From: Octopus sinensis
Taxonomy: Eukaryota
Length of the DNA: 64,000 bases
Direction: 5' to 3'
NCBI RefSeq assembly: GCF_006345805.1
Contig: NC_043011.1
Location: 7,812,001 to 7,876,000 of the forward strand
Under the pieces are notes generated by a model. That model had not been told where the DNA came from. It made no database searches and worked only from the letters and a program-made list of their open reading frames with translations. This document shows, one piece after another, positions 2,884 to 62,280 of this stretch; positions within the stretch are counted from its first letter, which is position 1, and every line of letters begins with the position of its first letter. The position numbers and the translations under genes were made by a program.

Positions 2884-3277
2884 TTTTACTCTTTTACTTG
2901 TTTCAGTCATTTGACTGCGGCCATGCTGGAGCACCGCCTTTAGTCGAGCAAATCGACCCCGGGACTTATTCTTTGTAATCCCAGTACTTATTCTATCGGT
3001 CTCTTTTGCCGAACTGCTAAGTGACGGCGACGTAAACACACCAGCATCGGTTGTCAAGCAATGCTTGGGAGACAAACACAGACACACAAACATACACACA
3101 CATATATATACATATATACGACGGGCTTCTTTCAGTTTCCGTCTACCAAATCCCCTCACAAGGCTTTGGTCGGCTCGAGGATATAGTAGAAGACACTTGC
3201 CCAAGATGCCACACAGTGGGACTGAACCCGGAACCATGTGGTTGGTAAGCAAGCTACTTACCACACAGCCACTCCTG

Positions 3278-3280
<3 letters not shown>
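2884..3280 (-). mobile_element. SINE family A (tRNA head, CORE-like segment, central microsatellite, tail)
   Basis: Head AGG(C)GCAGGAGTGGCTGTGTGGTAAG; GGCA(C/T)CTTGGGCAAGTGTC is CORE-like; tail ends GAAACAAGTAAAAGAG. Confidence 0.9.
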
Positions 3281-3324
<44 letters not shown>

Positions 3325-3372
3325 TATATGTGTATATATATGTATATATGTGTATATATATGTATGTATATA

Positions 3373-3775
3373 CAGGCGCAGGAGTGGCTGTGTGGTAAGT
3401 AGCTTGCTAACCAACCACATGGTTCCGGGTTCAGTCCCACTGTGTGGCATCTTCGGCAAGTGTCTTCTGCTATAGCCCCGGGCCGACCAATGCCTTGTGA
3501 GTAGATTTGGTAGACGGAAACTGAAAGAAGCCTGTCGTATATATGTATATATATATATATGTGTGTGTGTATGTATTTGTGTGTCTGTGTTTGTCCCTCT
3601 AGCATTGCTTGACAACCGATGCTGGTGTATTTACTTCCCCGTCACTTAGCGGTTCGGCAAAATGGACCGATAGAATAAGTACTGGCTTACAAAGAATAAG
3701 TCCCGGGGTCGATTTGCTCGACTAAAGGCGGTGCTCCAGCATGGCCGCAGTCAAATGACTGAAACAAGTAAAAGA
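3373..3775 (+). mobile_element. SINE family A
   Basis: Full head-microsatellite-tail copy, head-to-head with 2884-3280. Confidence 0.9.
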
Positions 3776-8141: not shown

Positions 8142-8504
8142 CTCTCTGTGTTTAGCCCATTGTGGGTAGTAAAGAAATAAGTATTTCGTCAGGGTCTTTA
8201 CGTTCTGAGTTCAAATCCCGCCGAGGTCAAGTTTGCCTTTTATTCCTTCGGTGACGATAAAATGGAAGTACCAATCATGTATTGATGTCGATGTCATCGA
8301 CTTGTTTCTTTCCTCAAAAAACTGAATCCGGCAACGGACCGGCGTCCCGTTCAGGGAGTTATGTTGTGACCTCGGTCACTTCCACGCCATGAAGAACGGG
8401 TAGCTGACCTTATGTCTGCTTGGGCTCGAGAAAAAATTAGCAGTAGAGTAGTGGGTGGGGGGATGGAGTTAGTAAACTAATTTGGAAAGATGAGCAGAGA
8501 TGGA

Positions 8505-8649
8505 CGGGGGATCACTCGGCTCGTCCGTCGATGAAGAGCGCGGCTATCCGCGTGAACTGATGCGAATTGCAGGACTCAGTGAACATCGACACCTCGAACG
8601 CACATTGCGGCCCCGGGATCCTATCGCCCCGGGGCCCCGTCCGGTCGAG
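8505..8649 (+). rRNA. Dispersed 5.8S rRNA copy (probable pseudogene or retrocopy)
   Basis: GGATCACTCGGCTCGTCCGTCGATGAAGAGCGC...GAATTGCAGGAC...CATCGACACCTCGAACGCACATTGCGGCCCCGGG matches the eukaryotic 5.8S core; no ITS, 18S or 28S flanks seen. Confidence 0.92.
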
Positions 8650-8657
8650 ATTTTCAG

Positions 8658-8895
8658 GGAGACGCAATAGCCCAGTGGTTAGGGCAGCGGACTCGCGGTC
8701 ATAGGATCGCGGTTTCGATTCCCAGACCGGGCGTTGTGAGTGTTTATTGAGCGAAAACACCTAAAAAGCTCCACGAGGCTCCGACAGGGGATGGTGGTGA
8801 TCCCTGCTGTACTCTTTCACCACAACTTTCTCTCACTAACGGCGGTGCATCAGCATGGCCGCAGCTCTGAGCTGAAACTAGAAAAAAAAAAAAAA
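8658..8895 (+). mobile_element. tRNA-headed SINE (family D), truncated, with a family-A-like tail and poly(A)
   Basis: Head matches 26246 and 31688 (GGAGGCGCAATGGCCCAGTGGTTAGGGCAGCGGACTCG; A/B-box-like); switches at about 8838 to ggcggtgcatcagcatggccgcag...gaaac followed by an A-run. Confidence 0.8.
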
Positions 8896-9370: not shown

Positions 9371-9547
9371 AGGCGCAGGAGTGGCTGTGTGGTAAGTAGC
9401 TTGTTTACCAACCACATGGTTCCGGGTTCAGTCCCACTGCGTGGCACCTTGGGCAAGTGTCTTCTACTATTGCCTCGGGCCGACCAAAGCCTTGTGAGTG
9501 GATTTGGTAGACGAAAACTGAAAAGAAGCCTGTCGTATATCTGTATA

Positions 9548-9633
<86 letters not shown>

Positions 9634-9845
9634 GTGTGTTTGTGTGTCTGTGTTTGTCCCAATGACAACCAATGCTGGTGTGTTTATGTCCCCGTTACTT
9701 AGCGGTTCGGCAAAAAGAGACCGATAGAATAAGTACTGGGCTTACAAAAGAATAAGTCCCGGGGTCGAGTTGCTCGATTAAAGGCGGTGCTCCAGCATGG
9801 CCGCAGTCAAATGACTGAAACAAGTAAAAGAGTAAAAGAGTAATA
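9371..9845 (+). mobile_element. SINE family A
   Basis: Full copy. Confidence 0.9.
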
Positions 9846-11632: not shown

Positions 11633-12694
11633 TCGATATTGCATTTCTGTGGCACATGGCAGAGTTAGGGTTTGGAGAAGAAGGGGTGAACATCATGCCG
11701 ATGGCTGTGTGGGGGAGAGAGACTTATGGGGTGGCCAGAACATCATGGTATGGGGCGGGATTGCACTCAACGAGAAACTTGGACCGGTTGTCTTCAAAAA
11801 CATCGGGGCAATGGAGCAACCGCTGCTCGTTACATTGACCAAGTATTGAAACCTCACATTGTGCAGTACTTTGCAAGTCATCGGAAGCCCGTGCCCATAC
11901 TGCCAGGTTGACAACAGACTTCCCCCAACAGCACAACATCCAGACACTGCCATGGCCTGCCCTAAGTCCTGACTTGAACCCCATAGAGCACCTGTGGGAC
12001 AAAATCCAAAGAAGGCTAAATGACATCCAGCCAAGGCTGACAACTGCAGCACAATCCACTGCAAGTTTTAACAGTGTGTGTGCTGCTATCTCTATGGCCT
12101 TCATCAATTGTTTTGTGTATTCAGATGTCCTTTCACGACTGGAGCGAGAAATCTTTAGAGAATGCTCTGGTTTCTAAAATTTATCAAGAAATGGCCACTT
12201 TGCCTTCAATATGTTCATTCAGCGAATCTAAACGAAATGGATTATCAAGAGAAAACAATGGCAGACGACAGGTCGGCTGCCATAAACTCTTCTTGCCGGA
12301 AGGAACAGATTTCACAAAAGGAGAGAAAAATATAATAGCTGGTCTTCGCCGAAATCGAGGTTGTGTACTCCCACATATTGATGTCTCAAAGAAAGAGTCG
12401 AATTCTTCGTCTGAAAACTGTAAACGAGTTAATATGAAAGGTAAAAAAATAGATGTCTGGCAGTAATCAAGGCTAACGGTGGTCACACGAGATTTTGAGT
12501 TCATCTCTTTGGATCCAGAACACTCCGTTATCACGTGACACCATGTAACGTCAAACATGTTTCAGGAAATGACATTTTATCATTAGGAAAGAACGGTTTC
12601 TTAATTAGAACTCTTCAATCAATGCTACGGCAGTCTGTTAATAAATTGGTTTCTATTTAGTATGTGTGCGACGTTTCTTTTGTGGTTCAGTATA
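11633..12694 (+). mobile_element. Tc1/mariner transposon remnant (5'-truncated, frameshifted transposase, right end present)
   Basis: MVWGGI motif; LPWPALSPDLNPIEHLWD; C-terminal RCLAVIKANGGHTRF* at 12451-98; ends ...CTTTTGTGGTTCAGTATA in a TA run. Confidence 0.88.
12128..12452 (+). pseudogene. About 325-bp copy of part of the 12748-13783 exon, inserted inside a Tc1 remnant
   Basis: Collinear with about 12980-13304 at roughly 95% identity by eye, with no indels; flanked by AGATGTC at 12123-29 and 12451-57. Confidence 0.9.
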
Positions 12695-12747: not shown

Positions 12748-13783
12748 ATCCTGGTTGGCACCGCCATCTCTGCTGCAATCATCAACATCTTCTACAACAT
12801 TACCAATGCTATTACCGACGGCACCGACATCCTCATTCTCTCCACATACAAAGCCGTTGTCTGTTCCACACCGTTTGAATGACAAGCAGATTTCGAAACG
12901 GTCAAACGTTCCTATCTCTTCCGACTGTTCAGATCGCCAAAATAATAATAATAATAAGTTGCATCGAGTTAATATCGCTTCCTTTCACGACTGGAGCGAG
13001 AAATCTTTAGAGAATGCTCCGGTTTCTAAAATTTATCAAGAAATGGCCACTTTGTCTTCAATATGTTCGTTGAGCGAATCTAATCAAAATGGATTATCAA
13101 GAGAAAACAATGGCAGACGACAGGTCGGCTGCCATAAACTCTTCTTGCCGGAAGGAACAGATTTGACTAAAGGAGAGAAAAATATAATAGCTGGTCTCTG
13201 CCGTAACCGAGGTTGTGTACTCCCACATATTGATGTCTCAAAGAAAGAGTCGAATTCTTCGTCTGAAAACTGTAAAAGAGTTAATATGAAAGGTAAAAAA
13301 ATAGTCAGTTATTTCCCTTCTATTCAGAACCTGGACAGCTCTTCAATGTTTTTACAAACCGTAAAAACCAATAAGAAAGAGGAATGCATTTATCATTGGT
13401 GGGAACAAAATCCGAATGTTGCAGCCAATTGTCTGCGCAAGTATAACGCATCGTGTGCCCTTCCGTTAGGAATGAACTATTTCAAAGACTATATGTCGTG
13501 TTTATTTTTAGATATGGGTTCGCAGATGTTTCATGCTGGCCGTAAGAATTCATCTTCGTCATCACCGTATGCATCGAGCGGGTCTTCTAGGAATCTTCAC
13601 GGAATCAAAGCACCGCCAAACACACCAAATTTAGAAGTTACCAATGCGAAAGATGGCAAAGTAAAGAATGGTAAAAGCAACAGAAAAGAAGTCAAGTTGG
13701 AAAATAGTAAAAAGAAAACCCATTTGGTAGTATATGTGCCGAAGGCTGAGGAAGACATTTGCGACAAAGATAGCAGAGATTAA
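12748..13783 (+). CDS. Probable terminal coding exon of an unrecognised protein
   Basis: Acceptor ttactcatttcag| at 12746-47, then about 344 open codons of non-repetitive sequence to TAA; Ser-rich start, Cys/Trp-containing middle, Lys-rich end; no family recognised; upstream exons not established. Confidence 0.6.
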
Positions 13784-26245: not shown

Positions 26246-26635
26246 TGGAGGCGCAATGGCCCAGTGGTTAGGGCAGCGGACTCGTGGTCATAGGATCGCG
26301 GTTTCGATTCCCAGACCAGGCGTTGTGAGTGTTTATTGAGCGAAAACACCTAAAAGCTCCACGAGGCTCCGGCAGGGGGTGGTCGTGATCCCTGCTGTAC
26401 TCTTTCACCACAACTTTCTCTCACTCTTACTTCCTGTTTCTGTTGTACCTGTATTTCAAGGGGCCGGCCTTGTCACTCTCTGTGTCACGCTGAATATCCC
26501 CGAGAACTACGTTAAGGGTGCACGTGTCTGTGAAGTGCTCAGCCACTTACACGTTAATTTCACGAGCAGGCTGCTCCATTGATTCGGATCAACCGGAACC
26601 CTCGTCGTCGTAACCGACGGAGTGCTTCCACTTAT
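26246..26635 (+). mobile_element. SINE family D, full length
   Basis: tRNA-like head; tail CCTCGTCGTCGTAACCGACGGAGTGCTTCCA. Confidence 0.88.
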
Positions 26636-26934: not shown

Positions 26935-27335
26935 CTTTACTCTTTTACTTGTTTCAGTCATTTGACTGCGGCCATGCTGGAGCACCGCCTTTAGTCGAAC
27001 AAATTGACCCCGGGACTTATTCTTTGTAAGCCCAGTACTTATTCTATCGGTCTCTTTTGCCGAACTACTAAGTGACGGGGACGTAAACACACCAGCATCG
27101 GTTGTCAAGCAATGCTAGGGGGACAAACACAGACACAAACACACACGCATATACATATATATACATATATACGACGGGCTTCTTTCAGTTTCCGTCTACC
27201 AAATCCACTCACAAGGCATTGGTCGGCCCGGGGCTATAGCAGAAGACACTTGCCCAGGATGCCACGCAGTGGGACTGAACCCGGAACCATGTGGTTGGTA
27301 AACAAGCTACTTACCACACAGCCACTCCTGCGTCT
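26935..27335 (-). mobile_element. SINE family A
   Basis: Full copy; a partial tail also lies at 26755-26880. Confidence 0.9.
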
Positions 27336-31090: not shown

Positions 31091-31687
31091 GCTGTGGCAC
31101 ATAAGAAGCACCGTTGAAGCATGGTCGATGCCAGTGCCACCTGATTGGCCCCCTTGCTGGTGGCATGTGTAAAGCACCCACTACACTCACGGAGTGGTTG
31201 GCATTAGGAAGGGCATCCAGTAGAAACCCTGCCAGATCAGACTGGAGCCTGGTGCAGCCTCCTGGCTTCCCAGACCCTGGTCGAACCGTCCAACACATGC
31301 CAGCATGGAAAGTGCATGTTAAACGATGATGATGATCCATGCACTGGATTTGAATTCTCTGCCCTCCGTGCAGGAAGTACAAGATCTTACATTCTTAACA
31401 GTTAAGCACAGTCACTTTATATGTTTGATAAACAGGAAATTTGACATTCCTGAAGCACACTCCCGAAATACACCCCCCCACACATTCAATCAAAGAAAGA
31501 CTGCTCTTGGTGGCATGGAAAGAGCACCCTGTACACACTTTGAAGTGGTTGACATTAGGAAGGGCATCCATTTATAGAAACCTGGCCAGACACTGGAGCA
31601 CAAGGCAACTCTTGGATGTTATTATAATGTGGATCCTCGTCCACTTGTATGTTATTGCCGGCACTGTAATATTCTTGTCGTCATTGT

Positions 31688-32008
31688 GGAGGCGCAATGG
31701 CCCAGTAGTTAGGGCAGTGGACTCGCGGTCGTAGGATCGCGGTTTCGATTCCCAGACCGGGCGTTGTGAGTGTTTATTGAGCAAAAACACCTAAAGCTCC
31801 ACGAGGCTCCGGCAGGGGATGGTGGTGATCCCTGCTGTACTCTTTCACCACAACTTTCTCTCACTCTTACTTCCTGTTTCTGTTGTACCTGTTAAGGGTA
31901 CACGTGTCTGTGGAGTGCTCAGCCACTTACACGTTAATTTCACGAGCTGGCTGTTCCGTTGATCGGATCAACCGGAACCCTCGTCGTCGTAACCGACGGA
32001 GTGCTTCC
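31688..32008 (+). mobile_element. SINE family D, internal deletion
   Basis: Matches 26246-26635. Confidence 0.88.
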
Positions 32009-33329
32009 ATCCATTCTTGTCGTCACTATTATGTTGTGGCGGTATTCCACATCTAATCTTTGACTCGTCTACTGTGCTCTCACTGACAGCTTCACAAGAC
32101 ATTGACTTTGAAAAGTCTGCCTTGACGGTAGCTTGGACTCGTATACAACACGTGACTCACACTGACTCCAACTGAGAACTCGTACAAAGACTCTACTACC
32201 ATTGACCTGCTACAACAACTAAGATTAATTAAACTGGTTTAATTACCATTTCATACTATATATTTTATAAACAAAGCTCTAAGGTTAATTAAATTGATTT
32301 AATTACCATTTTATAAACATTCATCATCATCGTTGTTGTCATTTAATGTCCACTTTCCATGCTGGCATGGGTAGGATGGTTTGACTGAGGACTAGTGAGT
32401 CAGAAGGCTGCACCAGGCTCCAATCTGATCTGGCAGGGTTTCTACAGCTTGATGCCCTTCCTGACACCAACCACTCAGAGAGTGTAGTCAGTGGTTTTAT
32501 GTGCTACTGGCACGAGGGCTAGTCAAGCAGTTCTGGCAACGACCACGCTCAAAAGGTGTTTTTTATGTGCTACCTGCATGGGAGCCAGTCCGGCGGCCCC
32601 GGCATCAACCACGCGCGAATGTTGTTTTTCATGTGCCACTGGCACATGTGCAGTAAGGCGATGCTGGCAACGACCATGGTCGAATGTTGTTATTTCTGAA
32701 TCTCTCAAAGAGAGGTATTTAGTGACAGTTCTCTAAAGTAAAGGCTATTTACCAACATAATGTGGCTGCCCATAATTTTTCCAGCTGGCTATACAACACA
32801 ATATCTGTGTCTTGTGCTGGACTCCCTGTTTAAAAATATAAGGACTTGCCAGCTGGAAACGATATTTCTTGGGGCTAAACAACAGTAACAACCGTCCTGC
32901 CCAGGACAGCCACATTATATTGGCAAATAGCCTTTACAGGGCGATGAGCTGGTAGAATTGTTAGCACGCTTGGTGAAATGCCTAGCAGTATTTTGTCTGC
33001 CATTACATTCTGAGTTCAAATTCCGCCAAGGTCAACTTTATCTTTCATCCTTTTGGAGTCAATTAAATAAGTACCAGTTATGCACTGGGGTTGATGTAAT
33101 CATCTTGTTAGGGTTATAGAAGACAGTGTATAGAGTCAAAATTATTGAAAAGGTTGCAAGACACAACGAAAATTTTAGAAAAATAAGAAAGAAATGTGGA
33201 AATTTTACTGGTGAGTGTGTTACATTATAAGGCACAAAAAGAGAATGACTCTCCCCAGACACAACAGAATATTCTTCAACACACGAACTCACATAAAGAA
33301 TCTTAGAAACCAAATCCAAAAACGAAACA

Positions 33330-37740: not shown

Positions 37741-39020
37741 GCGGCAAGCTGGCAGAAACGTTAGCACGCCGGGCGAAATGCTTTGCGGTATTTCGTCTGC
37801 CGTTACATTCTGAGTTCAAATTCCGCCGAGGTCGACTTTGCCTTTCATCATTTCGGGGTCGATTAAATAAGTACCAGTTACGCACTGGGGTCGATATGAT
37901 CGACTTAATCCGTTTGTCTGTCCTTGTCTGTCCTCTCTGTGTTTAGCCCCTTGTGGGCAGTAAAAAAATAAGTATCTTAAGCACCTCTTCTGAGCCTGGG
38001 CTGTTTTCAGAAGAAAGGGCCCAACCCCTAGCACACTCCACTCATGGATGCATCACAAAAGAAAGACAGTGTGTTCACAGTACCCATGGAACCACATGGA
38101 ATGTCATGACTGTGCCAAGTGGAGGCACATGGCTTGGTGGTTGTGGTTTCAATTCCTGTACCGGGTGATGCGTTGTGTTCTTGAGTGAAACACTTCATTT
38201 CACTCAGCTGATAAAAATAAATGATCCTGTGATGGACTGCATCCCCATCCAGGAAGGGATATATATATATAACAGGCGCAGGAGTGGCTGTGTGGTAAGT
38301 AGCTTGCTAACCAACCACATGGTTCCGGGTTCAGTCCCACTGTGTGGCATCTTGGGCAAGTGTCTTCTGCTATAGCCCCGGGCCGACCAATGCCTTGTGA
38401 GTGGATTTGGTAGATGGAAACTGAAAGAAGCCTGTTGTATATATGTATATATATATGTATATGTGTGTGTTTGTGTGTCTGTGTTTGTACCCCTAGCATT
38501 GCTTGACAACCGATGCTGGTGTGTTTACGTCCCCGTCACTTAGCGATTCGGCAAAAGAGACCGATAGAATAAGTACTGGGCTTACAAAGCATGGCCGCAG
38601 TCAAATGACTGAAACAAGTAAAAGAGTAGAGAAATCAGGAAACTGACCCTGTGCCCCTTACGGAGTAATGTGGACAAACCATAATTTCACAGATCTGCCT
38701 TAGGGGTCCCTCCCATAGCCTTGTTAAAACACTCAGTAAATTTCCCCACAATGCAACAAAGGTTTATTATGATTGTAGGCATGGTTTGTACAGAGCCAGT
38801 CCCACTCTTTTGTCTTTCAAACTTGTAAGGGAGCGAGGTGGCAGAAACGGTAGCACGCCGGGCGAAATGCTACCGCCAAGGTCGACTTTGCCTTTCATCC
38901 TTTCGGGGTCGATAAATAAAGTACCAGTCACGCACTGGAGTCGATGTAATCGACTTAATCCCTAATCCCTTTGTCTGTCCTTGTTTGTCCCCTCTATGTT
39001 TAGCCCCTTGTAGGCAATAA
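37741..39020 (+). mobile_element. Family-B SINEs at 37741-37975 and 38832-39020
   Basis: Consensus matches. Confidence 0.85.
38274..38630 (+). mobile_element. SINE family A
   Basis: Full copy with an internal tail deletion. Confidence 0.9.
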
Positions 39021-39423: not shown

Positions 39424-39830
39424 TTACTCTTTACTCTTTTACTTGTTTCAGTCATTTGACTGTGGCCATGCTGGAGCACCGCCTTTAATCGAGCAAATCG
39501 ACCCCGGGACTTATTCTTTGTAAGCCCAGTACTTATTCTATCGGTCTCTTTTTGCCGAACCGCTAAGTGACGGGGACATAAACACACCAGCATCGGTTGT
39601 CAAGCAATACTAGGGGGGACAAACACAGACACACAAACACACACGCACATACATATAAATATACATATATACGACGGGCTTCTTTCAGTTTCCGTCTACC
39701 AAATCCACTCACAAGGCTTTGGTCAGCCCGAGGCTATAGTAGAAGACACTTGCCCAAGGTGCCACGCAGTGGGACTGAACCCGGAACCATGTGGTTGGTA
39801 AACAAGCTACTTACCACACAGCCACTCCTG
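39424..39830 (-). mobile_element. SINE family A
   Basis: Full copy. Confidence 0.9.
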
Positions 39831-40473
39831 CGGCTTTGTGGAAGAAATATGACTCAGTACAAAAGATAAAATGTTATTTCTGTCACCCGTTTTCCAGTTG
39901 TCCCTTATCTGTAACTATGGCAACTGGTATTTATCTATTTTATCCAAACATGAATATAGTTATATATCAGTAAAACAAGAATTTCTATTGATTGCTTGCT
40001 TGTGCATGTTTGTAATGGTTGGTAGAGTTTGACTTGGAATCATCATCATCATCATCATCATTTAATGTCCGCTTTCCATGCTAGCATGGGTTGGACGGTT
40101 CAACTGGGGTCTGGGAAGCCCAAAGGCTGCGCCAGGCCCAGTCTGATCTGGCAGTGTTTCTACAGCTGGATGCCCTTCCTAACGCCAACCACTCCGTGAG
40201 TGTAGTGAGTGCTTTTTATGTGCCACTGACACAGGTGCCAGGGGAGGCTGGCAACGGCCACGATCGGATGGTGTTTGTTACATGCCACCAGCACGGAGGC
40301 CAGTCGATGCGGTGCTGGCTACGGCCACGTTCGGATGGTTCTCTTATGTGCCACAACTACAAATTCCATTGATGTTGATCGATTTCGTTTTTGATTTGAT
40401 TTTTTGATTTTTTTGATTTTCACTTGCCTCAAATTTGTTATTTCTAAACACTTTAACCCTTTGGCATTTAAAC

Positions 40474-43400
40474 GAATTCAGACTGTTATCCGACTCCCTA
40501 CGAAAAATACGAAATACGAAAAATGAATCCAAGCTAAGCAATCTATATTTAATTTCAACCCGTGTACCTACTTAACTATCTGCAACTGATCTGATCTTTT
40601 AGTTAACCCAGTTTTATCTCTATTAGTATTATTGTTATGACTTGTGAAATTTAGCCTCACGCCTTGTGTCTTTTTTATATGTACATATAATTCTATAGTT
40701 CATCTTAATTATATATCGTTGTCTCATGTCTTGTGTTAAATATATATTTAATCTTAAAGCTTGCCCCTAATTTTATTTTATTTTATCGATCAGTCTCACG
40801 CCTCGTAGATATAGAATAAATGTATTTATAATTTATAGCTCCTTATCGTTCACGCTTCTCCCATAGATTAGGCAAAATTTAGGTATTTATAGCTACTAAT
40901 AACTATTTCTCTCCCAAGGAAGGAAGAATGGCTGCCGGCCGATTCTTGGCGGGCCACGACCCCCCCCCCCCTCGTTCCTCTTCAATTGTCTTATATCTCT
41001 TTCGATCGCCATCCGGCCCCCTTCTCCGCAACCCTATATGCATATAAACCAGCGACTGATTTTAACGGCCTCACTTGAATTCAGACTGTTATCCGACTCC
41101 CTACGAAAAATACGAAATACGAAAAATGAATCCAAGCTAAGCAATCTATATTTAATTTCAACCCGTGTACCTACTTAACTATCTGCAACTGATCTGATCT
41201 TTTAGTTAACCCTGTTTTATCTCTATTAGTATTATTGTTATGACTTGTGAAATTTAGCCTCACGCCTTGTGTCTTTTTTATATGTACATATAATTCTATA
41301 GTTCATCTTAATTTATATCGTTGTCTCATGTCTTGTGTTAAATATATATTTAATCTTAAAGCTTGCCCCTAATTTTATTTTATTTTATCGATCAGTCTCA
41401 CGCCTCGTAGATATAGAATAAATGTATTTATAATTTATAGCTCCTTATCGTTCACGCTTCTCCCATAGATTAGGCAAAATTTAGGTATTTATAGCTACTA
41501 ATAACTATTTCTCTCCTAAGAAAGGAATGGCTGCCGCCCGGTTTTCGCGGTGCACCCGCCCTCCCACCCCCACCACCGGTACAGGAAGTCCTAAATTTTC
41601 TCATCCTTGTCTCCCTTATACACTTCAAAGTCTTACGCCACCCCCACCTCCTTCCATAAAAGGTAGTGGTCAGTCATTGCAAGATATGTTTAGTGTTGTG
41701 TACGAGGTTGAACTTAAGTTCCATTGTTTGTCTATGAATACTGCCAAACGCGAGTTTTCTTTTCAGGTCCATGACGCTATTAGGACCAATACCACTTCCA
41801 CCCCCACCCCAGCCTCAGGGTTGGCACCCTCAACGTTGGCACACTGAAAGGCAGATCTGGCGAGATAGTTGAATTGCTTGAACGGAGGTGGGTTGATATA
41901 TGCTGCATTCAAGAAGTGAGGTGGAGAGGAGGTTCTGCTAGGTTCCTCACAGGCAAAGGACAGAGGTACAAGATTTTCTGGGCTGGGAATACTGACGGAG
42001 TCGGGGGTGTGGGCATGCTTATCGCCGAAAAATGGGTAGATAAGGTAATCGAGGTAGTCAGAGTAAGTGACAGAATAATTAAGATTAGATTAGTGCTCCA
42101 CCATAGTTTAGCAACTATTATATCGGCCTATGCCCCTCAGCCAGGGCTACCTGATGGACAGAAAGACTGTTTCTATGACACCCTACTGCAGACCACATCA
42201 TTGACGAACGACAGGGACCTTCTCTTTGTGGCTGGTGACTTCAATGGGCATGTTGGACGATGTGCTGGGGGCTTCCATGGCGTGCATGGAGGCTACGGTT
42301 ATGGTTCCCGCAACGAGGAGGGAACCAGGCTGCTGGAGTTCTGCGATGCGAATAGTCTTATGATTTGCAACACTAACTTCAGGAAACCGACAAGCCACCT
42401 GGTCACCTACCGATCGGGCCGGCATACTAGCCAATCGACTACATCCTTGCCAGAAAAAGGAAAGATGGCTGCTTATAAATGCCAAAACCTTCCCAGGTGA
42501 AGAATGCACCCCACAACATAGACTGGTAGTTAGTGACTTTAGGATCAGGACTAAGAGGGCGACTAGAAGACGACCAACATGGAGAAGAAGGGTCTGGAAG
42601 CTTAAAGACCCTGCGAATGGACAGAGATTTAGAGATATGTTATTTGAAGCCTTAGACGAAATGGAAGGGATATAGCTACGCATGGGGTAGAAGACAACTG
42701 GACGCTTCTGAGGGACAACCTGCTGAAAGCCGCTGACCAGATCTGTGGCTGGTGCAAAGTCCCCTTAAGACCCAAATAAAACTGGTGGTGGAACAATATT
42801 GTTGACAGGGCTATTAGACAAAAGAAACAGGCTTGGAAGGCCTGAAGAACGGTGGTAGCAGGGAAGTGTATCAGTCTGCCAGAAGGAAGCCAGGAGACAG
42901 GTCTATCTAGCCAGAGGGGAGGCAGATAAGGAAAAATTTGCCAATGTCCTGCGTCGTGAGGATGAAACTTGAGGTATTTCGTGTTGCAAGACAGTGTGGT
43001 GAGAGAGAATCGTGATGTGGTAGGAGAGAAATGTGTTCGCAAGGAGGACGGTTCACTTGCGCTTAATGAGGATGCAAAGAGAGAGGCTTGGAGACGCCAC
43101 TATGATAGGTTGCTGAATGAAGAAAATGAATGGGATAAAGAGAGTCTGCCGAATGTCGACCCAACAGAGGGACCAGCAATCCGAGTTAACAGTTCCTTAG
43201 TAGATAAGGCAATTAGAAGCATGAAAGCATGAAAACAGGGAAAGCCCCAGGCCCATCAGGAATTACTGCAGAGATGCTCAAAATATCTGGTGGTGTCGGC
43301 TATAGCTTAGTCACCCGTATAGTTAACCAGGTGATACACGAGGGGGTCATACCCAATGACTGGTGTAGCAGCATAATAGTCAACTGCTACAAAGTAAAGG

Positions 43401-46400
43401 CGACGCCCTAGAGACAAATAACTACAGGGGCATCAAGCTGCTGGATCAGGTAATGAAGGTTACGGAGAGGGTTATAGCCCAACTAATTAGAGAGAGAGTT
43501 AGCTTAGATGATATGCAGTTTGGGTTCGTGCCAGGGAAAAGTACTACTGATGCTATATTCCTGGTAAGACAGCTGCAGGAGAAATACCTAGCCAAGATAA
43601 GCCCTTGTACCTGGCTTTTGTTGACTTGGAGAAAGCCTTTGACAGGGTCCCCCGTCCCTTATCTGGTGGTCAATGAGGAAACTAGGGATAGAAGAATGGT
43701 TGGTGAGAGCTGTGGCAAGCCATGTACAGAGACGCTGCTAGTAAGGTGAGGTTGGCAACGAGTACAGTGAAGAATTCCGGGTAGAGGTTGGGGTCCACCA
43801 AGGTTCAGTCCTCAGTCCCCTCCTATTTATCATAGTCCTCCAGGCAATAACGGAGGAATTCAAGACAGGTTGCCCCTGGGAGCTCCTCTATGCTGATGAC
43901 CTTGCTCTAATTGCTGAGTCACTATCAGAACTGGAGGAGATGTTTCAGGTGTGGAAACAAGGATTAGAATCGAAGGGCCTTAGAATCAACCTAGCCAAAA
44001 CCAAAGTCCTAATAAGTAGAAGGTAGATCAATCACAAACGCCTTCAGGTAGATGGCCCTGCTCGATCTGTAAAAAAGGTGTAGGTAGAAACTCTATAAGA
44101 TGCACCAAGTGTAAGCTATGGACACATAAGAGGTGCAGCAATGTCAAAGGAAGGCTAACTAGAAAAATAGTTTTTGTCTGTGGCAAATGCTCAGGAGCAA
44201 TAAACACTGGAAATGTGCAGAGACCAACTTCTGCCACGTTCCAGGGAGACAAACTAGAAGTAGTTGATAGCTTCCGTTACCTAGGTGACCAAGTCAGTAG
44301 CAGGGGTGGATGTATTGAAAGTGTAACTGCTAGAGTAAGAATAGCCTGGGCAAAGTTTAGAGAGCTCTTACCCCTGCTGGTGACAAAAGGCCTCTCGCTC
44401 AGAGTAAAAGGCAGACTGTATGATGCATGTGTACGTACAGCCATGCTACATGGTAGTGAAACATGGGCCGTGACTGCTGAGGATATGCGTAAGCTCGCAA
44501 GAAATGAAGCCAGTATGCTCCGATGGATGTGTAATGTCAGTGTTCATACTCGACAGAGTGTAAGTACCTTGAGAGAAAAGTTGGACCTAAGAAGCATCAG
44601 TTGTGGCGTGCAAGAGAGACGGCTGCGATGGTATGGTCATGTGACGAGAAAGGCTGAAGATAGTTGTGTGCAAAAGTGCTACACCCTAGCAGTTGAGGGA
44701 ACCTGTGGAAGAGGTAGACCCAGGAAAACCTGGGACGAGGTGGTGAAGCACGACCTTCGAACTTTAGGTCTCACTAAGAAAATGTCTAGAGACCGAGACC
44801 TATGGAAGTATGCTGTGCGTGAGAAGACCCGGCAAGACTAGTCAGGCCATAACCCGTGGCCCACCTGGGACGTAGTCAGTCCTGTGCATACCTTCCTTCT
44901 TGTGACACTTATGAAGACCTGTTGAGGCAAGTGAAAATCAAATCAAATCAAAACAAATCAAAATAGATGAACATCAGTGGAATTGTATTCTTTGTGGTAC
45001 CAGTGCCGGTGGCACACAAGAAAACCATCCAAACGTGGCCGTAGCCAGTACCGCATCGACTGGCCTCCGTGCTGTGGGCACAACAAACACCATCCGATCG
45101 TGGCCGTTCGCCAGCCTCATCTGGCACCTGTGCCGGTGGCACATAAAGACACCATCCGAAGACCCGGCGACGTAGTCAGTCCACCTGTGCATACCTTCCC
45201 TCTTATGACACTTGTGAAGACCTGTTGAGGCAAGTGTGTGACACTTGTGAAGACCTGTTGAGGCAGAGGCAAGTGTGTGACACTTGTGGAGACTGTTGAG
45301 GCAAGTGTGTAACCCTTGTGAAGACCTGTTGAGGCAAGTGAAAATCAAACCAAATCAAAATAGATGAATATCAATGGAATTTGTATCTTTGTGGTTCCAG
45401 TACCGGTGGCACACAAGAAAACCATCCGAACGTGGCCGTAGCCAGTACCGCATCGACTGGCCTCCGTGCTGTGGGCACAACAAACACCATCTGATCGTGG
45501 CCGTTCGCCAGCCTCACCTGGCACCTGTGTCGGTGGCACATAAAAACACCATCCAAAGACCCGGCGACGTAGTCAGTCCACCTGTGCATACCTTCCCTCT
45601 TATGACACTTGTGAAGACCTGTTGAGGCAGAGGCAAGTGTGTGACACTTGTGAAGACCTGTTGAGGCAGAGGCAAGTGTGTGACACTTGTGGAGACCTGT
45701 TGAGGCAAGTGTGTGACACGTGTGACACTTGTGAAGACCTGTTGAGGCAAGTGAAAATCAAACCAAATCAAAATAGATGAACATCAATGGAATTTGTATC
45801 TTTGTGGTTCCAGTACCGGTGGCACACAAGAAAACCATCCGATCGTGGCCGTTCGCCAGCCACATCTGGCACCTGTGTCGGTGGCACATAAAGACACCAT
45901 CCGAAGACCCGGCGACGTAGTCAGTCCACCTGTGCATACCTTCCTACTTATGACACTTGTGAAGACCTGTTGAGGCAAGTGAAAATCAAAATCAAATCAA
46001 ATCAAATCAAAACCAAATCAAAATAGATGAACATCAATGGAATTTGTATCTTTGTGGTACCAGTACCGGTGGCACACAAGAAAACCATCCGAACGTGGCC
46101 GTAGCCAGTACCGCATCGACTGGCCTCTGTGATGTGGGCACATAACAAACACCATCCGATCGTGGCCGTCCGCCAGCCTCATCTGGCACCTGTGTCGGTG
46201 GCACATAAAAACACCAACCGAAGACCCGCAAGACTAGTCAGGCCATAACCCGTGGCCCCTACTTGGACGTAGTCAGTCCACCTGTGCATACCTTCCTTCC
46301 TTCTTGTGACACTTGTGAAGACCTGTTGAGGCAAGTGAAAATCAAATCAAATCAAATCAAATCAAAATAGATGAACATCAATGGAATTTGTATCGTTGTG

Positions 46401-54187: not shown

Positions 54188-54354
54188 GCATGAAAAATTT
54201 CTCCAAATATTCTGGTGATAATCAAGATACTGGCCACCACCGTAGTAAACGTTTCACTCCACAACATGACACTTGTGATATGATCATTGTGGCTGACTAT
54301 ACATTCTTCAAAAATATTGGCAACTCAGACAGTTTGAATACGGCTAACTATTTA
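54188..54354 (+). CDS. ADAM17: ADAM17-like exon 7 (furin site, start of metalloprotease domain)
   Basis: ttttag|; (G)MKNFSKYSGDNQDTGHHRSKR/FTPQHDTCDMIIVADYTFFKNIGNSDSLNTANYL; matches ADAM17 RVKR...TCKLLVVADHRFY...TTNYL better than ADAM10; TTA|GTAAGT; phase 1 to 0. Confidence 0.95.
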
Positions 54355-54577
54355 GTAAGTACCAATTTATTTACTCTTTTACTTGTTTCAGTCATTTGAC
54401 TGCGGCCATGCTGGAGCACTGCCTTTAGTCGAGCAAATCAACCCCAGAACTTATTCTTTGTAAGCCCAGTACTTATTCTATTAGGCTCTTTTGCCAAACT
54501 GCTAAGTGACGGGGACATAAACACACCAGCATCGGTTGTCAATTAATGTTGGGGGGACACACACACATACATACATC

Positions 54578-55505
54578 ATCATCATCATCATCGTTTAACG
54601 TCCGTTTTCCGCGCTAGCACGGGTTGGACGGTTCGACCGGGGTCTGGGAAGCCAGGGGCCGCTCCAGGCTCCAGTCTGATTTGGCAGAATTTCTACGGCT
54701 GGATGCCCTTCCTAACGCCAACCACTCCGTGAGTGGATTGGGTGCTTTTTACGTGCCACCTGCACAGGGGCCGGGGGGTCCGGCATCGGTCGCGATCGGT
54801 TCGAGCTTTTAACGTGCCAGCGGCACGGGGGCAACTGGGTCCGGGGTACTTTGGGGATCCGGGGTACTTTGAATGGGTAGGGGGTATGTGGAATTGCTGC
54901 AGAAAGCAGCCCGGGTCTTTGCAATCACAGCATATCTCCAGAGATCTTGGTCTTTCGCCATTGTCTCAGTGAGGCCCAATGCTCTGAGGTCATGCTTGAC
55001 TACCTCATCCCATGTCTTCCTGGGTCTACCTCTCCCCCTGATACCTTCAACTGTTTGGGAGTGGCACTTCTTCACACATCTCTCTTCATCCATCCGCAGC
55101 ACATGACCATACCATCGCAAGCATCGCTCTTGCACACCACATCTGATGCTTCTTATATCCAGCATTTCTCTTAGGATGCTTACACTCTGTCTTGCGTGCA
55201 CACTGACACTACACATCCAGCGGATCATGCTAGCTTCATTTCTTTCAAGTCTACGCATGTCCTCTGCAGTCACTGCCCATGTTTCATTACCGTGAAGCAT
55301 GGCAGTTCGCACACATGCATCATACAATCTACCTTTCGCTTTGAGGGAGAGACCTTTTGTTGCCAGTAGGGGTAGGAGCTTTCTGAACTTTGCCCAGGCT
55401 ATTCGTATTCTAGTGGTGATACTCTCTGTGCATCCACCTCCGCTACTAACTTGGTCACCCAGGTAGCGGAAACTATCAACTACTTCTAGTTTCTCTCCCT
55501 GGAGT
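54578..55505 (-). mobile_element. 5'-truncated RTE LINE nested in a family-A SINE
   Basis: MYDACVRTAMLHGNETW...GRGRPRKTWDEVVKHDL, homologous to 44215-44841; 3' UTR ends in (GAT)n; the host SINE halves lie at 54368-54565 and 55960-56130. Confidence 0.9.
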
Positions 55506-58229: not shown

Positions 58230-58990
58230 GTGATTGATGGTGGTGGTGGTGATTGATGGTAAAGATGGTGGTGGAGGTGGTGATGATGATGAATGATAAT
58301 GATGATGGTGGTGGTGGTGGTGATTGATGGTAAAGATGGTGGTGGAGGTGGTGATGATGATGAATGATAATGATGATGGTGGTGGTGGTGGTGATTGATG
58401 GTAAAGATGGTGGTGGAGGTGGTGATGATGATGAATGATAATGATGATGGTGGTGGTGGTGGTGATTGATGGTAAAGATGGTGGTGGAGGTGGTGATGAT
58501 GATGAATGATAATGATGATGGTGGTGGTGGTGATTGATGGTAAAGATGGTGGTGAAGGTGGTGATGATGATGAATGATAATGATGATGGTGGTGGTGGTG
58601 GTGATTGATGGTAAAGATGGTGGTGGAGGTGGTGATGATGATGAATGATAATGATGATGGTGGTGGTGGTGATTGATGGTAAAGATGGTGGTGGAGGTGG
58701 TGATGATGATGAATGATAATGATGATGGTGGTGGTGGTGATTGATGGTAAAGATGGTGGTGGAGGTGGTGATGATGAATAATAATGATGATGGTGGTGAT
58801 TGACAGTAAAGATGGTGGTGAAGGTGGTGATGATGATGAATGATAATGATGATGGTGGTGGTGATTGATGGTAAAGATGGTGATGATGATGAATGATGAT
58901 GATGGTGGTGGGTAGTGATGTCTGGTGACGATAGTGGTGGTGGTGGTGGTGAGGGTAGTGTTTATGATACTGAATGTGGTGATGATGATC
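58230..58990 (+). repeat. GGT/GAT-based minisatellite, about 10 units of 59-71 bp
   Basis: Unit starts gattgatggtaaag at 58251, 58322, 58393, 58464, 58532, 58603, 58671, 58739, 58798 and 58863. Confidence 0.95.
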
Positions 58991-59645: not shown

Positions 59646-60403
59646 TCATCATCATCATCATCATCATCGTTTAACATCCGTTCTCCATGCTAGCATGGGT
59701 TGGACGGTTCGACCGGGGTTCTGGGAAGCCAGAAGGCTGCACCAGGCTCCAGTCTAATCTGGCAATGTTCTACAGCTGGATGCCCTTCCTAACGCCAACC
59801 ACTCCGTGAGTGTAGTGGGTGCTTTTTACGTGCCACCTGCACAGGTGCCAGGCGAGGCTGGCAACGCCACGGTCAGATTGGTGTATTTTATGTGCCACGG
59901 CACGGAAGCCAGTCGAGCGGTGCTGGCATTGGCCACGAGTCGGATAGTGCTTTTTAACGTACCACCAGACCAGGGATCTGGCTGGTTCAATTCGATCTGT
60001 GTTTGTCTGCCTAGCATTGCTTGACAACTGATGCTGGTGTGTTTACGTCACTTAGCGATTCGGCAAAAGAGGCCGATAGAATAAGTACTGGCTTACAAAG
60101 AATAAGTCCCGGGGTCGATTTGCTCGACTAAAGGCAGTGCTCCAGCATGGCCACAGTCAAATGACTGAAACAAGTAAAAGAGTAAAAGAATACACACAAA
60201 CGTATGCACGCTTACACACATACATATACATATAGCGTAGGAGTGGCTGTGTGGTAAGTAGCTTGCTTACCAACCACATGGTTCCAGGTTCAGTCCCACG
60301 CGTGGCACCTTGGGCAAGTGTCTTCCAATATAGCCTCAGGCTGACCAAAGCCTTGTGAGTAGATTTAGTAGAGGGAAACTGAAAGAAGTCCGCGTATATA
60401 TGT

Positions 60404-60462
<59 letters not shown>

Positions 60463-61225
60463 ATATCATCATCATCATCATCATCATCGTTTAACATCCG
60501 TTCTCCATGCTAGCATGGGTTGGACGGTTCGACCGGGGTTCTGGGAAGCCAGAAGGCTGCACAGGCTCCAGTCTAATCTGGCAATGTTCTACAGCTGGAT
60601 GCCCTTCCTAACGCCAACCACTCCGTGAGTGTAGTGGGTGCTTTTTACGTGCCACCTGCACAGGTGCCAGGCGAGGCTGGCAACGGCCACGGTCAGATTG
60701 GTGTATTTTATGTGCCACCGGCACGGAAGCCAGTCGAGGCGGTGCTGGCATTGGCCACGAGTCGGATAGTGCTTTTTACGTACCACCAGACCAGGGATCC
60801 TGGCTGGTTCAATTCGATCTGTGTTTGTCTGCCTAGCATTGCTTGACAACTGATGCTGGTGTGTTTACGTCACTTAGCGATTCGGCAAAAGAGGCCGATA
60901 GAATAAGTACTGGCTTACAAAGAATAGTCCCGGGGTCGATTTGCTCGACTAAAGGCAGTGCTCCAGCATGGCCACAGTCAAATGACTGAAACAAGTAAAA
61001 GAGTAAAAGAATACACACAAACGTATGCACGCTTACACACATACATATACATATAGGCGTAGGAGTGGCTGTGTGGTAAGTAGCTTGCTTACCAACCACA
61101 TGGTTCCAGGTTCAGTCCCACTGCGTGGCACCTTGGGCAAGTGTCTTCCAATATAGCCTCAGGCTGACCAAAGCCTTGTGAGTAGATTAGTAGAGGGAAA
61201 CTGAAAGAAGTCCGCGTATATATGT

Positions 61226-61260
<35 letters not shown>

Positions 61261-62280
61261 ATATATATATATGTAAATGTAATATGTGACAATTATTTGG
61301 TAGCCAAGATAAAACTCTGAGTTTCAGATGCCGAGGTGGAAATTCACACCACCATCTCTTCAGCATCTGAAACTCAGAGTTTTATCTGGCTACCAAATAA
61401 TTGTCACATATTACATTTACAGATAAATTCCTCTATTCACATAATATCGAGGTCTCTTTCTTTCTTTTGTTATCTTACCGTTTTTATCTCTCTCTCTCTC
61501 TCTCTGTATATATATATATCATCATCATCATCATCATCATCGTTTAACGTCCGTTCTCCATGCTAGCATGGGTTGGACGGTTCGACCGGGGTCTGGGAAG
61601 CCAGAAGGCTGCACCAGGCTCCAGTCTGATCTGGCAATGTTCTACAGCTGGATGCCCTTCCTAACGCCAACCACTCCGTGAGTGTAGTGGGTGCTTTTTA
61701 CGTGCCACCTGCACAGGTGCCAGGCGAGGCTGGCAACGGCCACGGTCAGATTGGTGTATTTTATGTGCCACGGCACGGAAGCCAGTCGAGGCGGTGCTGG
61801 CATTGGCCACGAGTCGGATAGTGCTTTTTACGTACCACCAGACCAGGGATCCTGGCTGGTTCAATTCGATCTGTGTTTGTCTGCCTAGCATTGCTTGACA
61901 ACTGATGCTGGTGTGTTTACGTCACTTAGCGATTCGGCAAAAGAGGCCGATAGAATAAGTACTGGGCTTACAAAGAATAAGTCCCGGGGTCGATTTGCTC
62001 GACTAAAGGCAGTGCTCCAGCATGGCCACAGTCAAATGACTGAAACAAGTAAAAGAGTAAAAGAATACACACAAACGTATGCACGCTTACACACATACAT
62101 ATACATATAGGCGTAGGAGTGGCTGTGTGGTAAGTAGCTTGCTTACCAACCACATGGTTCCAGGTTCAGTCCCACTGCGTGGCACCTTGGGCAAGTGTCT
62201 TCCAATATAGCCTCAGGCTGACCAAAGCCTTGTGAGTAGATTTAGTAGAGGGAAACTGAAAGAAGTCCGCGTATATATGT

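What the first reader, a model, noticed from the sequence alone, without database searches (positions are those of the whole stretch)
8505..8895. 5.8S rRNA copy fused head-to-tail to a SINE ending in poly(A): candidate 5.8S-headed retroposon
An almost complete 5.8S sequence with no ITS flanks is followed within about 8 nt by a family-D tRNA-like SINE head. This switches at about 8838 to a family-A-like tail and a 14-15 nt A-run. The three parts are visible in the sequence. Established: SINE heads derive from tRNA, 7SL, 5S and occasionally U snRNA or 28S, and RT template switching makes RNA-RNA chimeras. I do not know of a 5.8S-headed family. Inference: a double template switch during one retrotransposition, or a propagating composite. 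No convincing TSD was seen.
Basis: partly seen in the sequence, partly recalled or inferred. Interest (0 to 1): 0.72.

Follow-up and report, generated by a model that had tools for sequence, protein, structure and literature searches.

The report
5.8S–SINE–tail chimeric retrocopy
A near-complete copy of 5.8S ribosomal RNA is joined head-to-tail to the front half of one SINE and the last 44 bases plus A-run of another retroelement; it is most likely a one-off by-product of a reverse transcriptase hopping between RNA templates, not the founder of a new 5.8S-headed mobile element family.

Summary
Rfam finds one full-length 5.8S match (8496-8654, 109 bits against a cut-off of 42), the only one in 64 kb. 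It is 93.3% identical over 8501-8650 to genuine 5.8S genes fetched from rDNA units. Seven bases later (TTTTCAG) comes family-D SINE sequence, starting at D base 5 (8658) and stopping at D base 182 of about 326 (8837). A 44-nt tail (8838-8881) and 14 A's (8882-8895) follow. The tail is a relative of the family-A tail: same two stem-loops, second stem kept by compensatory changes. All parts point the same way. Junction 1 lies near an RNA end on both sides, and junction 2 sits on an ACT microhomology. Native D copies end without poly(A) and have 10-13 bp TSDs, so this D piece did not insert by its own route. No TSD flanks the whole or any part, but four of four informative A-tailed elements lack one too. 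Best reading: a dead-on-arrival tripartite chimeric retropseudogene made by LINE reverse-transcriptase template switching (tail, then D, then 5.8S). This is a known class; 5.8S as a partner appears unreported. Genome-wide copy number could not be tested, so a propagating family is unsupported but not excluded.

The parts
8501..8650 (+). 5.8S rRNA retrocopy core. The Rfam envelope is 8496-8654. Relative to the predicted mature ends of the related genuine genes it lacks about 5 nt at the 5' end and the 28S-pairing 3' terminus.
   Evidence: Rfam RF00002 scores 109.3 bits over model 1-154. Identity to genuine 5.8S in rDNA loci is 140/150. Both changes in the long 3' hairpin stem keep it paired: 8612 turns a U-G into a C-G, and 8616 with 8629 turns an A-U into a G-C. 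No non-canonical pair is flagged in the Rfam alignment. The relatives' GGCGG after GAGA pairs with CCGCC at their 28S 5' end and is absent here.
8651..8657 (+). Junction 1 filler, TTTTCAG. It stands where the relatives' 5.8S has GGCGGAA and where native D has TTGT.
   Evidence: Read directly from alignments A1 and A2. Its origin (untemplated addition by the RT, an oligo-U tail on a trimmed 5.8S, or a species-specific 5.8S end) is an inference and was not tested.
8658..8837 (+). Family-D SINE, bases 5-182 of about 326. It contains a box A (8668-8678) and a box B-like motif (8711-8722). The native 3' half and tail are missing.
   Evidence: It is 95-95.6% identical to 26247-26425 and 31688-31865. 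Alignment A1 shows where homology starts and stops. Native copies run on to ...CGACGGAGTGCTTCCA without poly(A) and carry TSDs of 13 and 10 bp. This copy has 4 private substitutions or indels in 180 nt, as many as each of the other copies.
8835..8837 (+). Junction 2 microhomology ACT, shared by D (...CTCTCACT|CTTAC) and family-A tails (...GCTCGACT|AAAGG).
   Evidence: Read directly.
8838..8881 (+). The 3'-terminal 44 nt of an element related to, but distinct from, family A. It has two stem-loops (8840-8861 and 8862-8874) followed by GAAACTAG.
   Evidence: It matches about 14 A tails at 75-82%. It folds into the same two-hairpin shape as A tails (z about -3.3), with the second stem CAGCU/AGCUG in place of CAGUC/GACUG, a compensatory change. 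The motif GCAGCTCTGAGCTGAAAC is unique in the window even allowing 3 mismatches.
8882..8895 (+). A-run of 14 A's. It is followed by GAGAAGA, which resembles the (AAAAGAG)-type ends of A tails.
   Evidence: A-tail ends are shown.

Best explanation
This is a single, dead-on-arrival tripartite chimeric retropseudogene.

Proposed sequence of events: a LINE reverse transcriptase began target-primed reverse transcription on the A-run and double-hairpin 3' end of an A-like retroelement RNA. After 44 nt it switched, at an ACT microhomology, into the middle (base 182) of a family-D SINE RNA. It copied that RNA to its 5' end. It then jumped onto the 3' end region of a 5.8S rRNA molecule and copied it almost to its 5' end before the cDNA was joined to the chromosome.

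Shown: the three parts, their shared orientation, their boundaries relative to native copies, the microhomology, the A-run and the lack of a TSD.

Inferred: the order of events, that all happened in one round, and the identity of the enzyme (the partner LINE of the A-type tail, which in this window leaves no clear TSD).

The locus most likely has no function. The 5.8S part cannot be carried along by transcripts started from the D part's box A/B, because those would start at or after the D 5' end.
For: - Parts and boundaries.
- D does not end this way natively. Native D has no poly(A) and makes 10-13 bp TSDs, so the D fragment did not enter by its own pathway.
- Junction 1 is end-to-end. The 5.8S homology stops within a few nt of its predicted mature 3' end, and D starts at base 5 of its own sequence, with 7 nt between them. 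Two unrelated insertions would not be expected to meet that way.
- Junction 2 lies on ACT, which is shared by both templates.
- The tail keeps the two stem-loops of A tails with a compensatory stem change. That is the kind of 3' structure a LINE RT recognises.
- The missing TSD is normal for this tail type: four of four family-A copies in unique flanks have none.
- The architecture matches four of the five published hallmarks of template-switch chimeras, and tripartite examples are documented (PMC2104539). Chimeras of LINEs with 5S, 28S, U6, U3, tRNA, 7SL and other RNAs are known (bioRxiv 10.1101/2025.02.02.635956).
- All three parts look about equally young. D has 4 private changes in 180 nt, and the 5.8S shows no broken base pair and a CpG o/e of 1.3.
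Against: - No TSD was found, so the involvement of target-primed reverse transcription is not directly demonstrated.
- The donor of the tail was not found: nothing in the window is closer than 82%.
- The species' own rDNA could not be obtained. The exact 5.8S ends, and hence how complete the copy is, rest on relatives that are 93% identical.
- Whether the D/A-like join was made in this event or earlier cannot be told from one locus.
- Genome-wide copy number is unknown. All outside searches were empty, and they are uninformative because the collections evidently lack this organism.
Confidence: 0.55

Rival explanations
1. Bipartite chimera. A hybrid SINE (D head and body to base 182, plus the A-like tail and A-run) already existed as a transcribed subfamily. 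One of its full-length RNAs was reverse-transcribed, and the RT made a single jump from its 5' end onto 5.8S rRNA.
For: SINEs in this window are modular. The 3' module of family A sits behind at least three different 5' partners. The D part keeps its box A/B, so a D/A-like hybrid would be transcribable. The octopus literature reports hundreds of SINE families (PMC13282606).
Against: Neither of the other two D copies in the window has this tail. The tail motif is unique in 64 kb. The D part carries no excess of private changes that would mark a separate subfamily.
Confidence: 0.2
2. End-joining or ligation rather than template switching. Either separate cDNAs (or RNAs ligated to each other before reverse transcription, as proposed for U6/L1) were joined, or the product was captured at a double-strand break independently of a LINE endonuclease.
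For: There is no TSD. A 7-nt filler of unknown origin sits at junction 1. RNA ligation is discussed as an alternative route to chimeras.
Against: All three parts share one orientation and lie in the order expected for a continuous cDNA that ends in an A-run. Junction 2 has microhomology. A-tailed elements lack TSDs here anyway. From my own knowledge, the ligase route needs a 2',3'-cyclic phosphate and a 5'-OH, which neither a matured 5.8S 3' end nor a Pol III primary transcript 5' end is expected to have.
Confidence: 0.1
3. A propagating 5.8S-headed composite retroposon family.
For: The composite ends in a LINE-recognisable tail plus an A-run, so any transcript that spans all of it could in principle be mobilised. 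Copy number outside the window is untested.
Against: There is one copy in 64 kb, whereas other SINE families have 3 to about 30 copies there. By established knowledge, 5.8S is made by Pol I as part of pre-rRNA and has no internal Pol III promoter. The only promoter-like motifs lie downstream, in D. A literature search found no 5.8S-derived SINE.
Confidence: 0.05
4. Independent neighbouring insertions: a 5.8S retropseudogene, and later a SINE landing right behind it.
For: The genome is very SINE-dense, and another SINE lies 200 bp upstream at 8142-8303 or beyond.
Against: No TSD brackets the SINE part or the 5.8S part. The D part lacks its own 3' half and tail, so it is not a normal D insertion. 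The 5.8S part has no A-tail of its own. The meeting point falls near an RNA end on both sides.
Confidence: 0.05

Closest known systems
Tripartite chimeric retrogenes made by double template switching of a LINE RT (Magnaporthe WEIRD/Mg-SINE/MGL; human and mouse examples; Gogvadze, Buzdin et al. 2007, PMC2104539)
   Same: Three RNA copies are fused directly in one orientation. The 5' part is a (near) full-length abundant non-coding RNA, the middle part is a SINE, the 3' part is the 5'-truncated end of a retroelement, and the 3' end is A-rich.
   Different: The 5' partner here is 5.8S rRNA, which I did not find reported as a partner. There is no TSD, whereas the fungal case has a 14-bp TSD (the two human cases were also uninformative). 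The 3' part is only 44 nt and comes from an unidentified A-like element. The host is apparently a cephalopod mollusc.
U6/L1, 5S/L1, 28S/L1 and similar bipartite L1 chimeras of mammals (Buzdin 2002-2003, from my own knowledge; bioRxiv 10.1101/2025.02.02.635956)
   Same: A small or ribosomal RNA is fused upstream of a 5'-truncated retroelement 3' end, attributed to template switching or RNA ligation during L1 retrotransposition.
   Different: Those are L1-driven, usually carry 7-15 bp TSDs and have two parts. 5.8S is not among the RNA species listed: it has no mention in that paper.
Composite or tail-swapped SINEs (a SINE head joined to a different LINE-derived tail)
   Same: The D(5-182)/A-like-tail join is the kind of event that creates new SINE subfamilies, and the promoter-like motifs and the LINE-recognition hairpins are both retained.
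   Different: There is no evidence here that this join has propagated, and it carries a 5.8S passenger upstream.
Genuine 5.8S rRNA genes in rDNA units (L001-L012)
   Same: 93.3% identity, all modelled base pairs intact, and a Rfam score of 109 bits against 117 for the genuine genes.
   Different: It is not flanked by ITS2 or 28S, and no 18S or 28S lies within 64 kb. It lacks the 3' terminal segment that pairs with 28S.

Membership tests
Template-switch chimeric retrogene (criteria i-v of PMC2104539) | (i) The 5' part is a full-length copy of a cellular RNA | tested here: met
   5.8S covers Rfam model 1-154. Homology to genuine genes spans 8501-8650, short of the predicted mature ends by about 5 nt at the 5' end and by the last few nt at the 3' end. 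So it is near-full-length rather than strictly full.
Template-switch chimeric retrogene (criteria i-v of PMC2104539) | (ii, iii) The 3' part is a 5'-truncated copy of another RNA, usually a retroelement | tested here: met
   Only the last 44 nt plus the A-run of an A-like element are present, whereas full A elements are 350-455 bp. The middle D part is entered internally, at base 182.
Template-switch chimeric retrogene (criteria i-v of PMC2104539) | (iv) Parts are joined directly in the same transcriptional orientation | tested here: met
   All parts lie on the + strand. Junction 2 has no filler and junction 1 has 7 nt.
Template-switch chimeric retrogene (criteria i-v of PMC2104539) | (v) Flanked by short direct repeats (TSD) | tested here: not met
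   The best flank match is no better than that of 49% of random position pairs in the window. Control: four of four A-tailed SINEs in unique flanks also lack a TSD, while the D copies have one.
Template-switch chimeric retrogene (criteria i-v of PMC2104539) | Oligo(A) or A-rich 3' end | tested here: met
   14 A's at 8882-8895.
SINE family with a 5.8S head (propagating retroposon) | Multiple dispersed copies sharing the same head-body junction | tested here: inconclusive
   There is one copy in 64 kb. No genome of this organism is in any collection on hand.
SINE family with a 5.8S head (propagating retroposon) | An internal Pol III promoter in the head, so that the head is included in the transcript | not testable with these tools
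   By established knowledge 5.8S is a Pol I product without box A/B or C. The only box A/B-like motifs (8668-8678 and 8711-8722) lie downstream of the 5.8S part.
SINE family with a 5.8S head (propagating retroposon) | A LINE-related 3' tail | tested here: met
   The tail is homologous to family-A tails and has a conserved double hairpin.
   ARAGORN finds no tRNA. Rfam finds no tRNA hit at E<=1 on this copy or at E<=10 on a native copy.
   Box A matches exactly, as TAGCCCAGTGG here and TGGCCCAGTGG in native D. The box B-like motif GGTTTCGATTCC has one extra T and lies 32 nt downstream. This was judged by reading, not by a statistical test.
Functional 5.8S rRNA gene | Embedded in an 18S-ITS1-5.8S-ITS2-28S unit | tested here: not met
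   No SSU or LSU hit anywhere in the window. A SINE starts 7 nt downstream. Genuine units are shown for comparison.

The most novel reading that the evidence does not exclude
The composite, or its D/A-like-tail portion, is a source gene, and the genome holds a family of 5.8S-headed (or newly tail-swapped) retroposons. That would make 5.8S a new class of SINE head alongside tRNA, 7SL, 5S, U snRNA and 28S.
Probability: 0.05. Interest if true: 0.7.

Novelty: new member of a known kind. Interest (0 to 1): 0.3.

Why it matters
If the reading is right, this is a clean natural record of two successive template jumps by an invertebrate LINE reverse transcriptase. One jump is internal and uses microhomology; the other goes from the end of one RNA to near the end of another.

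It would extend the list of RNAs caught in such chimeras to 5.8S rRNA, an RNA normally locked into the ribosome. It would also extend the phenomenon, best documented in mammals and a fungus, to what appears to be a cephalopod. The same event shows how SINE heads acquire new LINE-recognition tails.

It is a curiosity of mechanism rather than a new kind of element, and it probably has no function at this locus.

Tried and rejected
1. Probing the 5.8-billion-protein collection with ORFs that cross the junctions.
- The 82-aa antisense ORF over junction 1 returned only antisense-5.8S ORFs of genuine rDNA. That was useful for comparison, but there were no D or junction hits.
- The 56-aa sense ORF and the 64-aa ORF over junction 2 returned nothing.
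- Conclusion: the collection lacks this organism's SINE ORFs, so its silence says nothing about copy number.

2. Exact-pattern scans, all empty.
- Junction 1 and this 5.8S type in JGI metagenomes.
- The D core in GTDB genomes.
- The tail in IMG/VR.

3. Identifying the source genome.
- Exact look-up of two window ORFs: not on record.
- Searching papers for the relatives' assembly accessions and for SINE or 5.8S sequence strings: nothing.
It fits the repeat landscape but is untested.

4. TSD searches, ungapped and gapped, for three alternative boundary sets and for a far-upstream boundary: nothing above background.

5. A tRNA origin for the D head: not detected by ARAGORN or Rfam.

6. The idea that the A-like tail is the native end of family D with an internal deletion: rejected, because native D ends ...GGAGTGCTTCCA with no such tail.

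7. The LINE fragment at 41.9-44.8 kb as a partner: its 3' end, (AAATC)n-like, matches neither tail.

8. A paralogous empty site in the window: the flanks are unique.

Full report
**What is there**

Rfam finds exactly one family above its gathering score in the 64-kb window. It is 5.8S rRNA at 8496-8654 on the + strand, scoring 109.3 bits (cut-off 42) over model positions 1-154, with no non-canonical pair flagged. A permissive scan of the whole window adds no second 5.8S fragment and no other small-RNA pseudogene. Everything else in that scan is microsatellite noise far below gathering.

An antisense ORF that happens to cross the 5.8S/SINE junction served as a handle on a protein-indexed assembly collection. 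It returned six antisense-5.8S ORFs from genuine rDNA. Their contigs (L001-L012: two NCBI assemblies and marine metagenomes) hold complete 18S-ITS1-5.8S-ITS2-28S units. The five 5.8S genes I aligned (L001, L003, L005, L006, L007) are identical to one another.

The window's copy matches those genes from 8501 (TGGACGGGGGATCAC) to 8650 (CCGGTCGAGA), with 140 of 150 columns identical. Both changes in the long 3' hairpin stem keep it paired: a U-G becomes C-G, and an A-U becomes G-C through changes on both sides. The copy therefore derives from a working 5.8S of a somewhat different lineage and has decayed little.

It lacks about 5 nt at the predicted 5' end. After GAGA it also lacks the GGCGG that in the relatives pairs with CCGCC at the start of 28S. 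TTTTCAG (8651-8657) stands there instead.

**The SINE part**

Positions 8658-8837 are 95-95.6% identical to two other copies in the window. Those native copies define family D:
- it starts TTGTGGAGGCGCAATGG;
- it is about 326 bp long;
- it ends ...CGACGGAGTGCTTCCA without any A-run;
- it is flanked by TSDs of 13 bp (ATTCTTGTCGTCA) and 10 bp (TTATCAGCTT).

The copy in the finding therefore holds D bases 5-182 only. It has four private differences, as many as each of the other copies.

What can be read is an exact box A and a near box B.

**The tail**

This matches the 3' ends of about 14 family-A elements at only 75-82%.

It folds into the same two stem-loops as those ends. The second stem reads CAGCU/AGCUG instead of CAGUC/GACUG, a compensatory change. 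It is thus the functional 3' end of a related but different element. Its exact motif occurs nowhere else in the window, even allowing three mismatches.

The crossover sits on ACT, which both templates share: D has ...CTCTCACT and A has ...GCTCGACT.

**Target-site duplication**

Neither the whole composite, nor D plus tail, nor the 5.8S alone is bracketed by a repeat better than the window's background gives. This does not count against retroposition through the A-type tail. Four of four full-length family-A copies in unique flanks also lack a TSD. D copies, which use another tail, have clear ones. The two SINE families evidently depend on different LINE partners, and the composite behaves like an A-type integration.

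**Interpretation**

The layout is what a continuous cDNA would give:
1. synthesis begins on the A-run and hairpin end of an A-like RNA;
2. it switches into a D SINE RNA at an internal microhomology;
3. it runs to the D RNA's 5' end;
4. it jumps to the 3' end region of 5.8S rRNA and nearly reaches its 5' end.

This meets four of the five published hallmarks of template-switch chimeras, failing only the TSD. It parallels the tripartite cases described in Magnaporthe, human and mouse (PMC2104539). Surveys of L1 chimeras list U6, U3, U5, 5S, 28S, tRNA, 7SL, 7SK and Y RNAs but not 5.8S. A phrase search found no 5.8S-derived SINE or 5.8S retropseudogene in the literature on hand.

The 7-nt filler TTTTCAG could be untemplated addition at the jump, a U-tail on a trimmed 5.8S, or a native terminus. 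I cannot tell which without the species' own rDNA, and I could not retrieve that.

**Rivals**

- A pre-existing D/A-like hybrid SINE, meaning only one jump here, is the strongest rival. SINEs in this window are plainly modular: the 3' module of family A lies behind at least three different 5' partners.
- Ligation or break-capture routes fit the missing TSD. They fit the ordered, co-oriented, A-terminated layout less well.
- Independent neighbouring insertions are unlikely. The D piece lacks its own tail and TSD, and the two parts meet near their RNA ends.
- A propagating 5.8S-headed family has no support. There is one copy in 64 kb, and the only promoter-like motifs lie downstream of the 5.8S. 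It can only be excluded by a genome-wide search.

**Limits**

No collection available here holds this organism, so three things remain open: copy number, the orthologous empty site and the species' own rDNA. The organism itself was not identified. 'Octopod' fits the SINE-rich, microsatellite-rich landscape and the published octopus repeat content (PMC13282606), but that is not a test.

**Verdict**

The best explanation is a one-off chimeric retropseudogene of a known class with an apparently unreported partner RNA. Interest is modest.

Noticed in passing
window 54300-54570 (-), 60130-60187, 60951-61008 and 62005-62062 (+), and the family-A copies (e.g. 9375-9831): The roughly 190-bp 3' module of family A (TGTTTGTCCCC...GACTGAAACAAGTAAAAGAG) occurs behind at least three different 5' partners. 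These are the A head plus a microsatellite, an element ending in (GATGAT)n downstream of a LINE-like ORF, and a third sequence present in three repeated units about 0.8-1.05 kb apart. This suggests frequent module exchange, or template switching at simple-repeat tails.
   Followed up: partly
window 26247-26632 and 31684-32012, compared with 9375-9831, 26941-27331, 38278-38625 and 39435-39831: Family D copies carry 10-13 bp TSDs and have no A-rich end. Family A copies in unique flanks show no TSD and end in (AAAAGAG)-like repeats. The two SINE families seem to use different LINE partners with different integration footprints.
   Followed up: yes
window 41874-44841 (+) and 54809-55327 (-): LINE fragments. 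One ORF has an APE-type endonuclease domain (Pfam PF03372). A C-terminal ORF (…GRGRPRKTWDEVVKHDL…) is present in two diverged copies. The first copy is followed by an (AAATC)n-like end and then by repeated GC-rich units.
   Followed up: partly
window 12074-12466 and 12980-13304: A 325-bp segment is duplicated at 96% identity about 900 bp apart. It lies inside ORFs of 130 and 342 aa that have no Pfam match.
   Followed up: no
window 58235-58906: A tandem array with a 71/139-bp period (about 9 and 4.6 copies, 93-94% matches). It reads through as a His/Pro/Ser/Ile-rich 298-aa ORF on the minus strand and is probably non-coding satellite.
   Followed up: no
window 2890-3278 (-) and 3378-3775 (+): Two family-A SINEs lie head-to-head about 100 bp apart across a TA-rich simple repeat, forming a long inverted repeat. 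This is what produces the strong but sub-threshold plant-miRNA-like Rfam hits at 3203-3453 on both strands.
   Followed up: partly
L001-L012 (rDNA loci from GCA_041192925.1, GCA_052426985.1 and ENA/TARA marine metagenomes): The rDNA units examined have an 18S spanning about 2.6 kb against the 1.83-kb Rfam model. The five 5.8S genes aligned are identical across records although their ITS sequences differ. The organisms were not identified.
   Followed up: partly
window 26452-26500: The D copy at 26247 carries a 49-bp stretch that is absent from the D copy at 31684 (an insertion or a deletion), just downstream of the point where the composite's D part stops.
   Followed up: no
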